A stretch of DNA of 64,000 nucleotides from Ylistrum balloti (GCF_031769215.1 NW_026781950.1:1550001-1614000), one strand, 5' to 3'. Positions 27,885 through 62,780 are shown, counted from the stretch's first letter. Made by a program: numbers and translations. Notes: a model not told the origin generated them from the letters alone.

Positions 27885-28015
27885 AACTATACATTTTCAA
27901 TACCCTATCTTAATTTCGGCATTACTTTCGATCACTCTGGATTTTTCTCAATCGCCTCAGAGGCTTCAAGGCCCTTAGCATCAATGATTATTCCTTGATG
28001 GACAAGACAGAGGAA
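27885..28015 (+). repeat. Hammerhead-repeat family, degenerate copy (core 27978-~28015)
   Basis: CTTTCGATCACTCTGGATTTTTCTCAATCGCCTC..GGCTTCAAGGCCCTTAGCATCA-ATGATTA-TTCC-TTGAT-GGAC-AAGAC-AG is colinear with the copies at 42.4 and 45.0 kb. Catalytic core mutated. Confidence 0.7.
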
Positions 28016-30061
28016 GAGATCATGAAAAAAATAGCTACTCACATCAATCAAACTTAATGAAATCATGATTCATAATCTCCTATCTCTGATGTTAAATTTC
28101 ATTGTTTTCGACTATAAAACAAATACATGTTTCATTTTAGCATGAATTTATGCATTAATCAAAATTTCCGTTGATGTATGTCTGTTTGGAAATAAATTGT
28201 TTATTCTGTTTCAAACTTTAATAGGGAGAAAACAATATTATAGGCATTTGATTATTACGTAATGTACCATCTTGGCAGCATTTGGTGTGGAATGGCAATA
28301 TTGTATATCGGCACACTTCAAACATTAATCTTGATCAGAAGTAATTTACGCGGGCGCATATTTCTGTGAAAAAAGTACACATATGGCAATATCTTTTAAT
28401 AATGCATTGTCTTGTGTATTTATCTAACAATGCAAGTTAAATGTCATGAATAATTTATATAGCAAGTTCCAGAATTGTTTCATGCTTCGATATCAGCATT
28501 TGGAAAACATTACATGACAATCGGTAGGCTCAAAACTGGAAATGTAATTTCATATCTAGATAGCCTATGCCACAAAATTTGTAATTCGTGAAATTCCCTT
28601 GCACTATAAGTCTACAGTGGCTCTCATCAAAATATAAACAATTATTTAGGGGAATTTGATATCCTTCATGAAAATATGAAAGTCATTGATACCATTTCCT
28701 GAACAGTGTCAAACTAAGATACTTTATTTTTGCTTACTATATTTTGAGGAATGAGGCATTGCGATCACTTTTGTTGGGGTTTGCAGAGCCATTACAAATG
28801 TCTTCAATCTTTATCTTGCGTATGAAAATTTTGTTATTGACCATATCGATCGATCATGCATTTTTCATGAGTTCCTAAGATCTCATTCAACTACACTGAT
28901 CATTAAGACATCATCAGACAAACCGATTAGTGTAGAGGATTTCCTGTTAAAGTGATATTTCCATTCGTATATTCAAAGCTTTTAATATTCCTTTCCAACA
29001 ACAAGTTTCCCCAAGTCCAATGGCTCATTCACAATATCATGTTTAATGCAAAATACGCCATTTGATCACTGATACACCTTCTTTAGCAGGAAGTAGGGTA
29101 GTGAAAGATGAAAGTGCTCTATGCACTATTTGGGACTGGTAAAAATGTCGCTGTTGTTGTACAATGTATGACTGGCCTTGCTGTTAGTAACTGTGACTTT
29201 TGAACGTCTGTGATGGTACCTTAATACTCTAAATGAGGCTCATGTGTACAGTTTTCCTTCTAAATCAAGTTAAACATTTCTTTAAAAACTAGCAAACATA
29301 GCAAGGGGTTAATGATATATTCTACATTTTGGAAAACAATCTGGAAGACACCAAGTTTACAAGTAAAAGAATAATTGCTATTAATCAAGATTCCTGTGTT
29401 CGAATATGGATTCTAATAATTAATGGTATTCTATCACCAGATATATTTTTGATACAAATTAATAGATACATGGATGAAAAAGTAGAATTATTAATGAAAT
29501 AATAATATATTAATTGTTGAAATGTGCTTATACTGTATTTGAATATGACACTAGGAAAATTGACAATGTTGACAGATGACAAGCATCTGGAATGGTTCAA
29601 AGGGGTATGCCATATAGGTAAGTAGCTGCGCGTTGCAATCAATGTCAGCCACGTCTAAACCAAACCGGTCATGTCCCAAGTCTCCCAGACCTCGAAAGAC
29701 CAAAGATAGATTAGACAAATCACTGTGTAGACAGGTAAGGCGAGTCTTGTTCACCACTTCCAGAAGAATCAAAGGACAGTGGAACGTCAAAGTTTGAGTT
29801 AGTCGGTGTTCTGTCACAATTAACGAGTTTTCTCTGACCGACCAGTAAACGTCCTCTATTGACTTGAAGACGAAAAAAAAAAAAAAAAAACAAGGCTGAA
29901 ATGGACATATGATCGCATGACGTAGAATATCAACTTTTGTCGAAGAGACCACTGGTATGATGAAACCCGCCTTTTACATAGCCAACAGTCGTTAGAGTCC
30001 ATGGTTGGAGACCAAGAAATATGACATAGCATTAGAATCACATTCTGGGCAATACAGCATT

Positions 30062-30272
30062 TGGTAATAGCGGTGGTACTACCGAGTGGCGCACCTAGCC
30101 GTCCGGGGTTCGACTTCTGGAATGGACGTGAAAAGGTAAGGGTCACCAGCCTGACGACGTGGGTTTTCCCCGGGTACTCCGGTTTCCCCCCACAATAAGA
30201 CCCCTCGCGCGCTTTCATCCGAGTCACTAAATAACTTGTTTTGCAATTGCTGTAAAATAAATAAAGTTTATA
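30062..30272 (+). mobile_element. tRNA-derived SINE, family S1 (best-preserved copy)
   Basis: B-box GGTTCGACTTC (30107-30117), central GTGGGTTTTCCCCGGGTACTCCGGTTTCCCCCCACA resembling the V/Meta-type SINE core known from molluscs, and tail TGTAAAATAAATAAAGTTTATA. Confidence 0.85.
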
Positions 30273-31439
30273 GTTACTGTCTGGAGAATCTTTCCTCAAA
30301 ATTGTAGACTGTGCCCATATGTCAGTGATGGAACTTTAAAAGGGCAGATGCACTATGATTAGATCCTTCTGAACCTTTAGTTCATAAACCTTGGATGCAT
30401 ATACACTAGCAGATCAGCCTATCGTAATTGATGGTAATGCCAAACCACAGAGAGCATGCATAGTGCAGGATTATCCTCAACAAGAAGTATTTTCTCAGAA
30501 CAAGCATTAGTGTCTGGTCAATGGTATGATGAGAAAGGTAGAAGAATTGAACCAAATATGTTATGACTCTACCCGATATTGATATATTCATACCAAAAGA
30601 AATTCGTTAATCTTCTTGATCAAGTTACTTGTATTTATGATTAGATTACTTGACATTGATAATACCTTTTTGAGCACGTCTTTTTACATTGGTTTCTAAC
30701 CATTTTAGTGCAGTTTAGTTTAATGAAAAAAAAACTTTTCTAAAATATCCTTTCGAGTTGTCATTAATTTATTGTTTCTGAGATATTGCTTACAAAAGTA
30801 AGCCCAATTAAAATCCGGGAGGTAGTCCATAGCTTATGACTAAGTATATATGACAATCAGATTTTCGAAATCAATGCTAGGTGTTTTCTAGATCCGAAAA
30901 ATATTTCAGCGATTTTTGCAGCGACTCTCAGACTTCGTTTCTAGTGATAAATTGTTCAATATTGTAGACGTAGCTTCTTCCTTCCTCGGCAGTGGTCTTA
31001 TAAACAAATGAGAAACAAACAGCAGGGGATCTATCTCGTACTGCTGAAAATGCACTGACAGATAACAGGTGCCAATGTCTTGTAAATGAGTATGAAAATT
31101 TCTATGTTAGGTCATAAAATTATAAGGCACTGTTACAGATAATGGTATTATTGAACAAAAGAGTACAAATTTACAATTCAACACAGATTACCAGCATCAA
31201 ATGTGTATAAGGAATAACTAAATATTCCTATTCCTATCAAGATATACACATCACTGTTAAGATTGCTTGTATATATTTCCATTTCGGTGGAGATACAAAA
31301 GAGGAAATTAATGCTGAATACATGGAATAGCCCAGTGTTTCCTCTAATAATCCCATTTTCAAGGTCTCAACCACTCGATGATAGCAAATTTAAAAAGAAC
31401 ACAAAAAACTACATTTCAAGAGAATCAAAGTCAAGATGA

Positions 31440-60586: not shown

Positions 60587-61619
60587 CAAAGACATATAAA
60601 AATGAACAAATACCAATAATTGCATGCCTTTTCTTTGTTCTGAATATTGCGATGTTTAAACTAAGAATAGTAAATAGCGGAACGGTTAAGGATATACATT
60701 TGTTTATGACGTTCTTTAAGGATAAACCTTTTAAGTATTCCTATCTTTGGCATATACTGTATCTAAATTTGTATTGTGCTATGTTTTTCCTATCGTAAGC
60801 GTCAAGAGAAACAATCAAAGATGTCAATTACTGCCTGTTATGCTTCGTTGAACGTCAGTCATTGTGTTGCTGTATGGCATATTGATATGATTCAGATATC
60901 ATCTGCGTTTGGATTTTTTTGTCCCGGTTGAATATCTGTAATGCATGTTACCAATGTCTAGACAGTATTTGTATCAAGAAAAGAGTACCTGTCACGCTAA
61001 AAGGTTCTGTTCAGATGAGTTGATTGTCTATATGCCTCGTTCATCAAGTGCACAAATCTTTATCCCGTTCCAAGGATTTTTGGCTCATCGAGTTCGAACA
61101 GTGTTCTTTGATGGTTGCCAACTTTGCATTACCGATGTATTTACACTTTTTGTTATCGGCATTGATGTTTATATCTGAATTCTTCCGTCGCTGCAATGAT
61201 AAACTTTGCTAAGTGTTCACGCTTAATATCTCAAATAAAACTATCTTTGACAAACTGACGCTCGATAAAAACGACCTCGTACGGGATAAAATGCAATCGT
61301 AACAGCATTGGAGACCTATGAAGCTATGAAAAGAGTAACCATGACCTTTGTTACGAAATGAAACCATATTGTGGTAATTGATCGTATTTGAAGTTGTATT
61401 GCAAATAGTAGATCATCTTCGGCCGCTTCAATAAATATGAGATGGAACAGAAAACAGACTCCAGATTCTTCATGGTCCGCACTTTTAATTGCATCACAAT
61501 TGCAGTTTTGAGAAACAATCTTATTTCATATTCCTTAAAATAATATGAGAAGACTATTATATGTCTTTAAATACCTTTCAATACATGTCTAGAATAATCA
61601 ACGATATTCTTTAAATTAC

Positions 61620-61893
61620 TTAGATTTCGCAAATTCTTTGTTTCGTTAACATATCCATTCAGATAAATTCGCGAATACATGATTTCGCAAACTCTGATGT
61701 CGAAATGACTTCAAATTCGCAACCAATGAGGTATTAGAGATCATGACTCTTCCAAGACTCCGATATCAGTAACAGGATCAACATTATTCATTTTCGTACA
61801 AATGATCGCGAGGGAATTAAATTCGCTATTGATTATCCTCGCGTTTGAAAGCGAAAATAAATCCCACACGAAATATATATGTGATTTACAGTA
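61620..61893. mobile_element. Probable MITE remnant
   Basis: Multiple TTCGCG/TTCGCA/CGCGAG motifs and a terminus CACGAAATATATATGTGATTTACAGTA of the TACTGTAAA...TTTACAGTA type. The left terminus is not preserved. Confidence 0.4.
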
Positions 61894-62649
61894 ACCAAAT
61901 AATGAGTACAACTGATCATACAAATGTCATCGAAACTTTCCGAAAGAAATGTCTAAATCTAGACAGGGAAGCGCACTAGTATTTTTGAAAATACCAGATG
62001 GGTTCAAAAGAACTCAAGCATATTTGTACATTTCGAACCGTCCAATCATTAATGCGAAATACTTCAAATTTGGCATGTAAAAATGTAAGGAATCCACCAT
62101 TGTCTACCACAGGCCACCCAGAGAATTGTACAAATGACACTCAAGAGATTTGCACCAGAATGAGTAGATTTGTCCAGAACTCGCTAGTTTGGTATAGGAC
62201 AATGAGATAATCTGGCAGAGATAGAGATAGATGTTTAGATATCGATATTTCACTGTTGATATTGTTTCATCGATTGTGAGTTTCACTTGGGTTCTTTTCA
62301 TACAAAGTTACGTCATATTTTCTTGTAGTTTTGGAAATTGAATAATTAGATTAGACTTCTTCAAATCGAAACAATCAATATATGTCATTATTCATGATTT
62401 ATAATATGAAGTTAAACGTGACATGCGGGCTTTCAGCAAACATGAAGGGTCTAATTTAGGTCTAGTAAATTTTACATTCTGTTCGTGTGTTCTAATTAAA
62501 TACAATAGCCCGAGGCATCGATTTAGCCTTACAAACTACATGATCACGTGATGACGTAACAATAACGTCGCTGTTATTATTTACTACAGTGTAGTTGAAT
62601 ATACATATGTTCAGTATAAACGCTTATCTAAGATATAATTGACAAAACT

Positions 62650-62780
62650 TGTACATCAAATGTAACTCGAGTACCTAAACCAGCTATGTGATGCAGTTTG
62701 TATGGTCATTTGGCTCTGTTGTATCTAATTCTGATTTTGTATTCAAATTGCTATTCATTTGTGTGTCATTTGTACATGTA
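62650..62780 (+). repeat. Hammerhead-repeat family, degenerate copy (core 62653-62694)
   Basis: ACATCA...AAAC-CAGCT-ATG-TGATGC-AGTTTGTATGGTCATTTGGCTCTGTTGTATCTAATT..CTATTCATTTGTGTGTCATTTGTACA matches the 3' half of the family. Stem II and the core are lost. Confidence 0.7.

What the first reader, a model, noticed from the sequence alone, without database searches (positions are those of the whole stretch)
27885..62780. Dispersed ~230-bp repeat family whose consensus is a complete minimal hammerhead ribozyme (candidate retrozyme or Penelope pseudo-LTR family)
Seen: six colinear non-coding copies on both strands (cores at 27978, 36862-36905, 42470-42513, 45100-45143, 58104-58151, 62653-62694). 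The three best cores are all 44 nt. Each copy carries different mutations, but position-by-position comparison gives GCAUCA CUGA(U/C)GA GUCC UAGAA GGAC GAAA C AGCU G UA UGAUGC. That is a 6-bp stem I, the invariant core, a 4-bp stem II, a 2-bp stem III closed by the palindromic loop AGCU, and a GUA cleavage triplet. The first core base is C in two copies and A in three, so C3 is chosen from hammerhead knowledge. Established: minimal type-I hammerheads with a palindromic loop 3 occur in Penelope-like retroelements and metazoan non-LTR retrozymes and cleave as dimers. Inference: six copies in 64 kb suggest a very abundant, once-mobile ribozyme element. I cannot tell whether this family has been described.
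Basis: partly seen in the sequence, partly recalled or inferred. Interest (0 to 1): 0.85.

Follow-up and report, generated by a model that had tools for sequence, protein, structure and literature searches.

The report
Decayed hammerhead retrozyme copies, bivalve genome
The window holds about ten old, broken copies of an abundant, roughly 400-base non-coding jumping element whose founder sequence carries a complete self-cutting hammerhead RNA motif; it is a scallop-type example of the "retrozyme" elements already described in mussels, corals and salamanders, so it is real but not a new kind of thing.

Summary

The 32-nt core (up to 1 mismatch) occurs 7,748 times in the genome and 0 times in the reversed control. 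Two intact genomic copies reach Rfam's Hammerhead_1 gathering score (34.4 and 34.1 bits against 34). The best window copy scores 27.9 bits.

The unit is about 396 bp, not 230 bp. It is non-coding and 37-39% GC. The hammerhead lies about 95 nt from a fixed 3' end.
- 5' ends are variably truncated.
- Some copies run through a precise head-to-tail junction into a second unit (33 exact junctions at separate places).
- In many copies the 45-nt hammerhead is expanded into an internal tandem array.

This fits the published metazoan non-LTR retrozymes, thought to be mobilised by Penelope-like elements. Such elements are present here with hammerheads of their own, but none of 30 sampled loci shares sequence with this family.

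Every window copy is dead: 72-89% identical to the consensus, each with core or stem damage. I found no RNA data, no target-site duplications and no covariation. This scan had already reported the same family on other pieces of this genome. Verdict: a new member of a known kind, of modest interest.

The parts
27393..27663 (+). Old family copy with an internal deletion (profile 71-173 joined to 261-383). A relic of the hammerhead 3' half lies at about 27538-27567.
   Evidence: nhmmer hits; sequence; alignment; 73% identity to the consensus.
27903..28010 (+). Fragment holding the proximal 5' arm and a heavily decayed hammerhead core (27978-28010).
   Evidence: 78% identity.
36734..37114 (-). The best and nearly full-length copy (profile 25-403). 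Its 3' end is the exact family terminus ...TTCACTTGTGTGTCTTTTGTACAAT.
   Evidence: nhmmer E=1.5e-82; 87% identity; the 3' 25-mer is an exact match at C93:1586780-1586804.
36862..36905 (-). Hammerhead core of the best copy. It is dead: C3>A in the catalytic core and G16.2>U in helix III.
   Evidence: Rfam Hammerhead_1 27.9 bits, E=0.0063, below the gathering score of 34; alignment; fold.
36561..36641 (-). A separate 3'-arm fragment (profile 295-375), 92 nt downstream of the best copy. The two 3' arms lie about 215 bp apart, so this is not a unit-length tandem.
   Evidence: 89% identity.
42240..42591 (+). Near-full-length copy that starts at the family's 5' hairpin module (CAGTGGTAGACATTGCTGGTG). 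It has an internal deletion and an internal T-run.
   Evidence: 74% identity.
42470..42513 (+). Hammerhead core. It is dead: GAAA>GAAG (A15.1>G) and C15.2>U, and the 3' strand of stem I is lost. Its fold is no better than shuffled sequence.
   Evidence: z = +0.26.
44984..45241 (+). 5'-truncated copy (profile 141-399).
   Evidence: nhmmer E=1.7e-58; 87% identity.
45100..45143 (+). Hammerhead core. It is dead: G5>A, CAGCUG>CAGAUG, and the 3' strand of stem I is damaged.
48031..48098 (+). Short fragment of the 3' end (profile 315-378).
   Evidence: nhmmer E=1.9e-5.
58021..58146 (-). Strongly 5'-truncated copy: a decayed hammerhead (58104-58146, with indels) plus the 3' arm.
   Evidence: 77% identity.
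61940..62079 (-). 5'-arm fragment (profile 33-190).
   Evidence: nhmmer E=5.3e-9.
62666..62776 (+). Strongly 5'-truncated copy: a relic of the hammerhead 3' half (62666-62694) plus the 3' arm.
   Evidence: 77% identity.

Best explanation
The window carries about ten decayed fragments, probably eight or nine separate insertions, of one non-autonomous, non-coding retroelement family of a bivalve (scallop-like) genome.

Anatomy of the unit, about 396 bp:
- a 5' hairpin module (AGCAGGTGGTAGACACTGCTGG);
- a 5' arm of about 240 nt with an internal T-run;
- one type-I hammerhead, or in many copies a tandem array of the 45-nt hammerhead unit;
- a 3' arm of about 95 nt ending at a fixed terminus (...GTCTTTTGTACAATCTTT).

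Inferred life cycle, following the published model for metazoan non-LTR retrozymes:
- Source loci are transcribed into RNA longer than one unit.
- The hammerhead has only a 2-bp helix III closed by the palindromic loop AGCU. It becomes competent when two hammerheads pair through CAGCUG, either between neighbouring units or as a dimer, and it trims the RNA to unit length.
- The unit RNA may be ligated into a circle.
- A reverse transcriptase supplied in trans, most likely from a Penelope-like element, primes at a fixed site and copies the RNA into a nick in the chromosome. It often stops early, which gives 5' truncation. It sometimes runs past one unit, which gives a precise head-to-tail junction.

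Shown here: the hammerhead, the copy number, the fixed 3' end, the 5' truncation, the junctions, the lack of coding capacity, and the decay of every window copy.

Inferred only: cleavage, circles, and the identity of the enzyme.
For: Hammerhead:
- The genome-wide majority sequence of 20-29 copies is a perfect type-I hammerhead.
- Natural copies L008 and L009 score 34.4 and 34.1 bits against Rfam RF00163, whose gathering score is 34. A two-unit stretch in L020 scores 48.4 bits as Hammerhead_3, whose gathering score is 48.5.
- The 32-nt core occurs 7,748 times in the genome and 0 times in the reversed control.
- Two adjacent units fold into the three-way junction with an 8-bp helix III (z about -3). 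A single unit does not form helix III.

Retroelement anatomy:
- 3' ends cluster at profile positions 370-389 in 34 of the non-array hits, while 5' starts are spread over positions 2-340.
- Counts with up to 3 mismatches fall from 3' to 5': the 3'-terminal 25-mer 5,479, the proximal 5'-arm 27-mer 1,440, the 5' hairpin 27-mer 999, with controls of 0-4. The 3' and hairpin counts include tandem arrays.
- Long copies continue upstream through a constant junction into another 3' arm. There are 33 exact junctions at separate places, nearly all with the same 11-nt spacing, and 0 in the control.
- The copy termini do not coincide with the cleavage site, so the templates were either uncleaved or re-ligated RNA.
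- There is no open frame above 48 aa, and GC is 0.37-0.39.
- No tRNA, 5S or 7SL match appears in 20 loci.

Possible enzyme source:
- The genome has several lineages of Penelope-like elements with a C-terminal GIY-YIG domain, in copies 96-99% identical. Each has its own short-helix-III hammerhead with a palindromic loop, 40-165 nt from its 3' end.

Literature:
- Mussels carry about 5,000 type-I hammerheads in 350-390-bp repeats that are expressed as circular RNA, and Penelope-like elements are proposed as the mobilisers (PMC7229834).
- Retrozymes are related to the pseudo-LTRs of Penelope-like elements in Xenopus (10.64898/2026.07.22.740005).

Other species:
- Contigs of a second organism hold the hammerhead unit in tandem but hardly any of the arms.
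Against: - None of the runs that hold the sequence is on record as RNA, so expression, cleavage ends and circular junctions are all unobserved.
- No target-site duplication signal: the mean longest shared flank word is 5.33 against 5.44 in mismatched controls.
- No covariation in the stems beyond shuffles (104 of 500 shuffles reach the observed score).
- The hammerhead is only slightly better conserved than its arms: 0.913 against 0.85-0.90.
- None of the 30 GIY-YIG loci shares sequence with the family beyond incidental nearby insertions, so the mobilising partner is unidentified.
- Most copies are monomers or fragments, not the long unit-length tandem arrays typical of published retrozymes.
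- Only 2 of about 29 similarity-selected copies pass a strict hammerhead descriptor.
- Internal arrays include catalytically dead variants, such as the 42-nt unit in L057. This shows that at least the arrays grow at the DNA level regardless of ribozyme function.
Confidence: 0.8

Rival explanations
1. The copies are pseudo-LTR pieces (solo or 5'-truncated tails) of an autonomous Penelope-like element that was not sampled here. On this reading they are not an independent non-autonomous family.
For: The hammerhead lies about 95 nt from the 3' end. The genome's own Penelope-like elements carry theirs 40-165 nt from the end. Partial head-to-tail tandems are typical of these elements (PMC8557442). 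The last 20 nt or so loosely resemble the tail of one Penelope lineage: TCTTTTGT..CAA..TC.TTT.
Against: The head-to-tail junction joins the 3' end directly to the 5' hairpin with a constant 11-nt spacing and no open reading frame between them. No family sequence lies inside the homologous body of any of 30 GIY-YIG loci, and the nearby hits lie beyond those elements' 3' termini. The helix sizes (I = 6 bp, II = 4 bp) are those of retrozyme-type hammerheads, not of the Penelope 'min-HHR' (PMC4209133). The Penelope lineage with the similar tail inserts into (TA)n, and the family does not.
Confidence: 0.1
2. It is a DNA-level repeat. On this reading it resembles the tandem-repeat-containing MITE or Helentron-associated elements of bivalves, with two arms around a variable internal minisatellite. 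The hammerhead would be a passenger that plays no part in spread.
For: The layout is 5' arm, then N copies of a 45-bp unit, then 3' arm, with N from 1 to over 50. Other modules of the element also form arrays of 44-47 bp. Arrays of dead hammerhead variants exist. No target-site duplications were detected.
Against: I saw no terminal inverted repeats and no Helitron-type ends. 5' ends are graded while the 3' end is fixed. Copies run over one unit through a precise junction. These are marks of reverse transcription. The founder hammerhead is perfect, and its unit is kept in a second organism whose arms differ.
Confidence: 0.07
3. The hammerhead resemblance is a chance feature of an ordinary repeat.
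For: No window copy reaches Rfam's gathering score, and there is no covariation.
Against: Every invariant core position and all three helices are present in the genome-wide majority sequence. Two natural copies reach the gathering score, and a tandem pair comes within 0.1 bit of the type-III threshold. 93% of stem cells pair, against 12-50% when the partners are slid. The core occurs 7,748 times against 0 in the control.
Confidence: 0.02

Closest known systems
Metazoan non-LTR retrozymes (Cervera and de la Pena 2020, PMC7229834), especially the 350-390-bp Mytilus galloprovincialis repeats with about 5,000 type-I hammerheads
   Same: Both are non-coding, AT-rich units of about 400 bp in a bivalve host, present in thousands of copies with head-to-tail arrangements. 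Both carry a type-I hammerhead with a 6-bp helix I, a 4-bp helix II and a short palindromic helix III. Both coexist with autonomous Penelope-like elements.
   Different: Here most copies are dispersed monomers or 5'-truncated pieces with a fixed 3' terminus, not long unit-length tandems. Many copies carry an internal tandem array of the bare 45-nt hammerhead. Expression and circular RNA are not shown. I could not compare the sequence with the mussel family because its sequences are not in the held text.
Minimal hammerheads in pseudo-LTRs of Penelope-like elements (Cervera and de la Pena 2014, PMC4209133; Craig et al. 2021, PMC8557442)
   Same: Both have a hammerhead near the 3' end with a short helix III and a palindromic loop that implies action as a dimer. 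Both form partial tandems and show 5' truncation. Such elements with their own hammerheads are present in this genome.
   Different: There is no RT/GIY-YIG reading frame. The helix sizes differ: the min-HHR has a 7-8-bp helix II and a 4-5-bp helix I. The family shares no sequence with the 30 sampled Penelope-like loci.
Newt satellite 2 and Schistosoma Sm-alpha hammerhead repeats (described in PMC7229834 and PMC4209133; details partly from my own knowledge)
   Same: They are repetitive, non-coding units of a few hundred bp carrying a type-I hammerhead that cleaves efficiently only as a dimer or in tandem.
   Different: The hosts and sequences differ. Those repeats are shown to be transcribed and to self-cleave, which is not shown here.
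Tandem-repeat-containing MITE-like or Helentron-associated elements of bivalves (pearl and CvA type; cited in PMC5139131 and PMC5874043; details from my own knowledge)
   Same: Both have two unique arms flanking a variable-number internal tandem repeat and are dispersed through a bivalve genome.
   Different: Those are DNA elements with repeats of about 160 bp and no ribozyme. This family shows a fixed 3' end, 5' truncation and over-unit copies, which point to reverse transcription.

Membership tests
Hammerhead ribozyme, type I (Rfam RF00163) | Conserved core C3-U4-G5-A6-N7-G8-A9 ... G12-A13-A14, with an A15.1-U16.1 pair and a non-G residue at position 17 | tested here: met
   The core is present in the genome-wide majority sequence and in natural copies L009 and L028. 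It is not met by any window copy, each of which has a core or stem lesion.
Hammerhead ribozyme, type I (Rfam RF00163) | Score at or above Rfam's gathering threshold of 34 bits | tested here: met
   L008 scores 34.4 and L009 scores 34.1. The best window copy scores only 27.9, E=0.0063, and nothing in the window reaches the gathering score.
Hammerhead ribozyme, type I (Rfam RF00163) | Three helices supported by covariation | tested here: inconclusive
   93.3% of stem cells pair, against 12-50% in slid controls. The covariation score is no better than shuffles (104 of 500), as expected for neutral decay from one founder.
Hammerhead ribozyme, type I (Rfam RF00163) | Site-specific self-cleavage after H17 | not testable with these tools
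   This needs in vitro transcription of natural monomer and dimer copies.
Metazoan non-LTR retrozyme | Non-coding unit of about 170-400 bp with low GC, carrying a type-I hammerhead | tested here: met
   The unit is about 396 bp, GC is 0.37-0.39, and the longest open frame is 48 aa.
Metazoan non-LTR retrozyme | Head-to-tail tandem copies, so that two hammerheads bracket a unit | tested here: inconclusive
   There are precise head-to-tail junctions at 33 separate places, and partial tandems in L005, L006, L009, L021 and L024. No clean unit-length dimer with two intact hammerheads was among the loci fetched, and most copies are monomers or fragments.
Metazoan non-LTR retrozyme | Expression as unit-length linear and circular RNA | tested here: inconclusive
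   None of the runs that hold the sequence is on record as RNA, and only assembled contigs could be laid, which cannot show ends.
Metazoan non-LTR retrozyme | Coexistence with autonomous Penelope-like elements | tested here: met
   There are 51 GIY-YIG matches. Several lineages have a C-terminal endonuclease, and some copies are 96-99% identical with open frames up to 755 aa.
Penelope-like element pseudo-LTR | The unit flanks, or continues into, an RT plus GIY-YIG reading frame | tested here: not met
   No family sequence lies within the shared body of 30 GIY-YIG loci. The nearby hits lie beyond those elements' 3' ends. Only 1.5 kb on each side of the endonuclease domain was available.
SINE (pol III-derived) | A tRNA-, 5S- or 7SL-related head and an A-rich or simple-repeat tail | tested here: not met
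   No such Rfam match at E up to 1 in 20 loci. The 3' end is ...ACAATCTTT with no tail.
Retrotransposed insertion in general | Target-site duplications flanking the copy | tested here: inconclusive
   No signal above mismatched controls in 30 old copies whose 5' boundaries are imprecise.

The most novel reading that the evidence does not exclude
The family's genomic footprints may be a direct record of reverse transcription running round a circular retrozyme RNA from one specific priming site. Those footprints are a single fixed 3' terminus about 95 nt past the cleavage site, graded 5' ends, and copies that pass through a precise junction into a second unit. The same process, through template switching, may also generate the 44-47-nt arrays of three different modules: the hammerhead, the 5' hairpin and the 3' end. 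If so, this scallop family would show where and how the still unknown retrozyme mobilising enzyme primes.
Probability: 0.2. Interest if true: 0.55.

Novelty: new member of a known kind. Interest (0 to 1): 0.3.

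Why it matters
It adds a well-delimited scallop family to the known hammerhead retrozymes. 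The family has clear termini, a 5'-truncation gradient and precise over-unit junctions, and these constrain how such elements are copied. Because copy termini do not coincide with the cleavage site, the templates were uncleaved or re-ligated RNA. For genome annotation, the family explains roughly 3% of this window and thousands of hammerhead hits genome-wide. It does not change what is known about ribozymes or retroelements, and this scan has already reported the same family on other pieces of this genome.

Tried and rejected
- Rfam at gathering threshold on the window gave nothing. The permissive scan gave one sub-threshold hammerhead.
- I looked for an autonomous partner. A family profile, Rfam and my own hammerhead descriptor were run on 30 GIY-YIG loci. 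Only incidental family insertions turned up, and they lie beyond those elements' 3' ends. Those elements have unrelated hammerheads of their own.
- The 3'-terminal resemblance to one Penelope lineage (TCTTTTGT..CAA..TC.TTT) is too short to count, and that lineage targets (TA)n, unlike the family.
- I tried to fetch full Penelope units and the head-to-tail junction loci.
- I looked for RNA evidence. None of the runs that hold the sequence is on record as RNA. Laying contigs showed presence only, with no ends. This does not show that the element is silent.
- The target-site duplication test gave no signal.
- The covariation test was no better than shuffles.
- I looked for an excess of copies starting at the cleavage site. 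There are too few incidental copies and there is no peak.
- The whole-unit RNA fold is not significantly more stable than shuffles, z = -1.25.
- A full-text search for the hammerhead string found no paper, and the supplement of PMC7229834 does not hold it. The Pecten satellite PjHhaI could not be compared because that paper is not held.
- A majority sequence of this non-coding repeat was computed in scripts only to set boundaries and measure divergence. It is not given in full here, and nothing is proposed to reactivate the element.

Full report
**Observation**

A core pattern with up to 3 mismatches hits three sites in the window and none in 100 shuffles. I read the three sites directly. BLAST and a family profile then found 11 fragments on both strands, 1,819 bp or 2.8% of the window.

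Against an intact natural copy, every window core is damaged:
- 36862-36905 (-) has C3>A and G16.2>U.
- 42470-42513 (+) has A15.1>G and C15.2>U and has lost the 3' strand of stem I.
- 45100-45143 (+) has G5>A and a broken CAGCUG.
- The other three are relics.

Window copies are 72-89% identical to the family majority sequence, so they are old. Rfam at its gathering thresholds finds nothing in the window. The permissive scan gives Hammerhead_1 at 36862-36905 with 27.9 bits, E=0.0063.

**The family in the whole genome**

The window is C93:1550001-1614000 of a 648-Mb assembly. A similarity search gave 2,277 first-look candidates.

The majority sequence of 29 copies, and separately of 20 long copies, contains GCATCA CTGACGA GTCC TAGAA GGAC GAAA CAGCTG TA TGATGC.

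The 32-nt core with up to 1 mismatch occurs 7,748 times and 0 times in the reversed control. Natural copies L008 and L009 reach Rfam's Hammerhead_1 gathering score (34.4 and 34.1 against 34). A stretch spanning two adjacent 45-nt units in L020 scores 48.4 bits as a type-III hammerhead, against a gathering score of 48.5.

A single unit folds with helices I and II but not helix III. Two adjacent units fold into the full three-way junction with an 8-bp helix III made from the CAGCUG palindrome (z about -3). This matches the published view that animal type-I hammerheads with a short palindromic helix III act as dimers or in tandem (PMC4209133).

**Anatomy**

Profile hits on 45 loci show one layout: 5' arm, one or many 45-nt hammerhead units, 3' arm.

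- 3' ends cluster tightly at ...GTGTGTCTTTTGTACAATCTTT and are followed by unrelated sequence, with no A-tail.
- 5' starts are scattered.
- Long copies run further upstream through a constant stretch that contains a small hairpin (AGCAG...CTGCT), and then directly into another 3' arm. The unit is therefore about 396 bp and can be head-to-tail.
- An exact-match pattern across that junction finds 33 separate places, nearly all with the same 11-nt spacing, and none in the control.
- Counts with up to 3 mismatches fall from 3' to 5': 5,479 for the 3'-terminal 25-mer, 1,440 for a proximal 5'-arm 27-mer, and 999 for the 5' hairpin 27-mer. The 3' and hairpin counts include tandem arrays.
- The unit has no open frame above 48 aa, and GC is 0.37-0.39.
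- No tRNA, 5S or 7SL match was seen in 20 loci.
- Copy termini lie about 95 nt past the cleavage site, not at it. The copied RNA was therefore either uncleaved or re-ligated.

**What it most likely is**

These features match the metazoan non-LTR retrozymes. Mussels carry about 5,000 type-I hammerheads in 350-390-bp repeats that accumulate as circular RNA. The proposed mechanism is reverse transcription of primed circular RNA into tandem cDNA by an enzyme from a Penelope-like element (PMC7229834). A 2026 preprint relates vertebrate retrozymes to Penelope pseudo-LTRs (10.64898/2026.07.22.740005).

Helix I of 6 bp, helix II of 4 bp and a 2-bp helix III with a palindromic 4-nt loop are what PMC4209133 calls the canonical metazoan type-I hammerhead, not its Penelope 'min-HHR'.

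**The possible partner**

A GIY-YIG search found 51 matches. The endonuclease is C-terminal in all 30 loci fetched. They fall into several lineages, some with copies 96-99% identical and open frames up to 755 aa.

Several carry their own hammerheads with palindromic loops (CCGG, CAUG, CUAG, GCGC) 40-165 nt from their 3' ends. That geometry resembles the family's, but there is no shared sequence. Family hits near these loci lie beyond the elements' 3' termini. The mobilising element is therefore unidentified.

**Weak points**

- None of the runs that hold the sequence is on record as RNA. Contigs of a probable source-species DNA run rank the hammerhead far above the 3' arm, and the 3' arm above the distal 5' arm. 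The tool warns that this depth is not a copy number.
- Contigs of a second organism contain the hammerhead unit in tandem with a slightly longer spacer, but almost none of the arms. This hints that the ribozyme outlives its carrier. The nature of those runs is unknown.
- No target-site duplications were detectable in 30 old copies.
- Stem covariation is no better than shuffles, although 93% of cells pair against 12-50% in slid controls.
- The hammerhead is only slightly better conserved than the adjoining arms, 0.913 against 0.85-0.90.
- Only 2 of about 29 similarity-selected copies pass a strict descriptor.
- Arrays of dead variants exist, so array growth is at least partly ordinary DNA repeat expansion.

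**Earlier notes of this scan**

The same family was already reported on other pieces of this genome, with the same reading (s1-244120, s1-240653). So were the 45-nt hammerhead arrays inside a dispersed element (s1-234339, s1-249757).

A note on this window calls 36553-37000 a head-to-tail dimer (s1-234446). I find a full copy followed, after 92 nt of unrelated sequence, by a separate 3'-arm fragment.

**Verdict**

This is a new member of a known kind. All window copies are dead.

Noticed in passing
window 49806-51993: A 2.2-kb minisatellite with a 23-bp unit (ACATTGTGAATAAATCGGTTATT), about 95 copies at 80-92% matches. It coincides with the window's lowest GC and strongest GC skew.
   Followed up: no
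window 1492-2214 (-): An open frame of 240 aa matches the rhodopsin-family 7-transmembrane receptor domain (PF00001, E=6.9e-27). It is probably a GPCR exon. The stretch from 27 to 63 kb that holds the repeat copies has no recognisable coding frame.
   Followed up: partly
L057 969-2842 (G000:C17, around 891 kb): About 45 copies of a 42-nt derivative of the hammerhead unit with a dead core (CTGGCGA, and GAAA changed to AAAA) and a shortened loop 2. This array expanded without ribozyme function.
   Followed up: partly
G000:C185:231466-236011; also C233:1197077-1198546, C246:416197-417771 and C736:51331-52061: The family's 5' hairpin module (AGCAGGTGGTAGACACTGCTGGTGGAC) forms its own tandem arrays with a period of about 47 bp, up to 4.5 kb long. 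Only coordinates were seen; the sequence could not be fetched.
   Followed up: no
L091 1519-2052 (G000:C55:974706-975285); also C548:421748-421880: The last 44 nt of the family's 3' arm are repeated 13 times head to tail at the end of an otherwise ordinary copy. Three different modules of the element therefore each form arrays of 44-47 bp.
   Followed up: partly
L071, L076, L077, L088 (about 2549); L068, L070 (2558); L079 (2533); L083 (2341); L082 (1883); L084 (about 1239-1278, minus strand): Several lineages of Penelope-like elements with a C-terminal GIY-YIG domain carry their own short-helix-III hammerheads with palindromic loops (CCGG, CAUG, CUAG, GCGC).
   Followed up: partly
L064, L078, L080-L082, L085-L087 (3' ends at about 1961-2020 in EN-sense orientation): One young Penelope lineage, with copies 96-99% identical and mostly 5'-truncated, is inserted into (TA)n microsatellites.
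   Followed up: no
G000:C422:240415-261997 (L072-L075, L089): At least five tandem copies, with a 5.36-kb period, of a Penelope-like element with an intact 755-aa frame, about 99.6% identical to one another. A sister pair lies at C129:50248 and C129:67535.
   Followed up: no
runs X1-X3 laid on L009:1583-1626: A second organism's contigs hold the hammerhead unit in tandem with a longer inter-unit spacer. The loose-end consensus reads ...UGAUGU CCCUA ACAUCA.... That would turn the outermost stem-I pair from G-C into A-U. Four units in this genome show the same A-U pair.
   Followed up: partly
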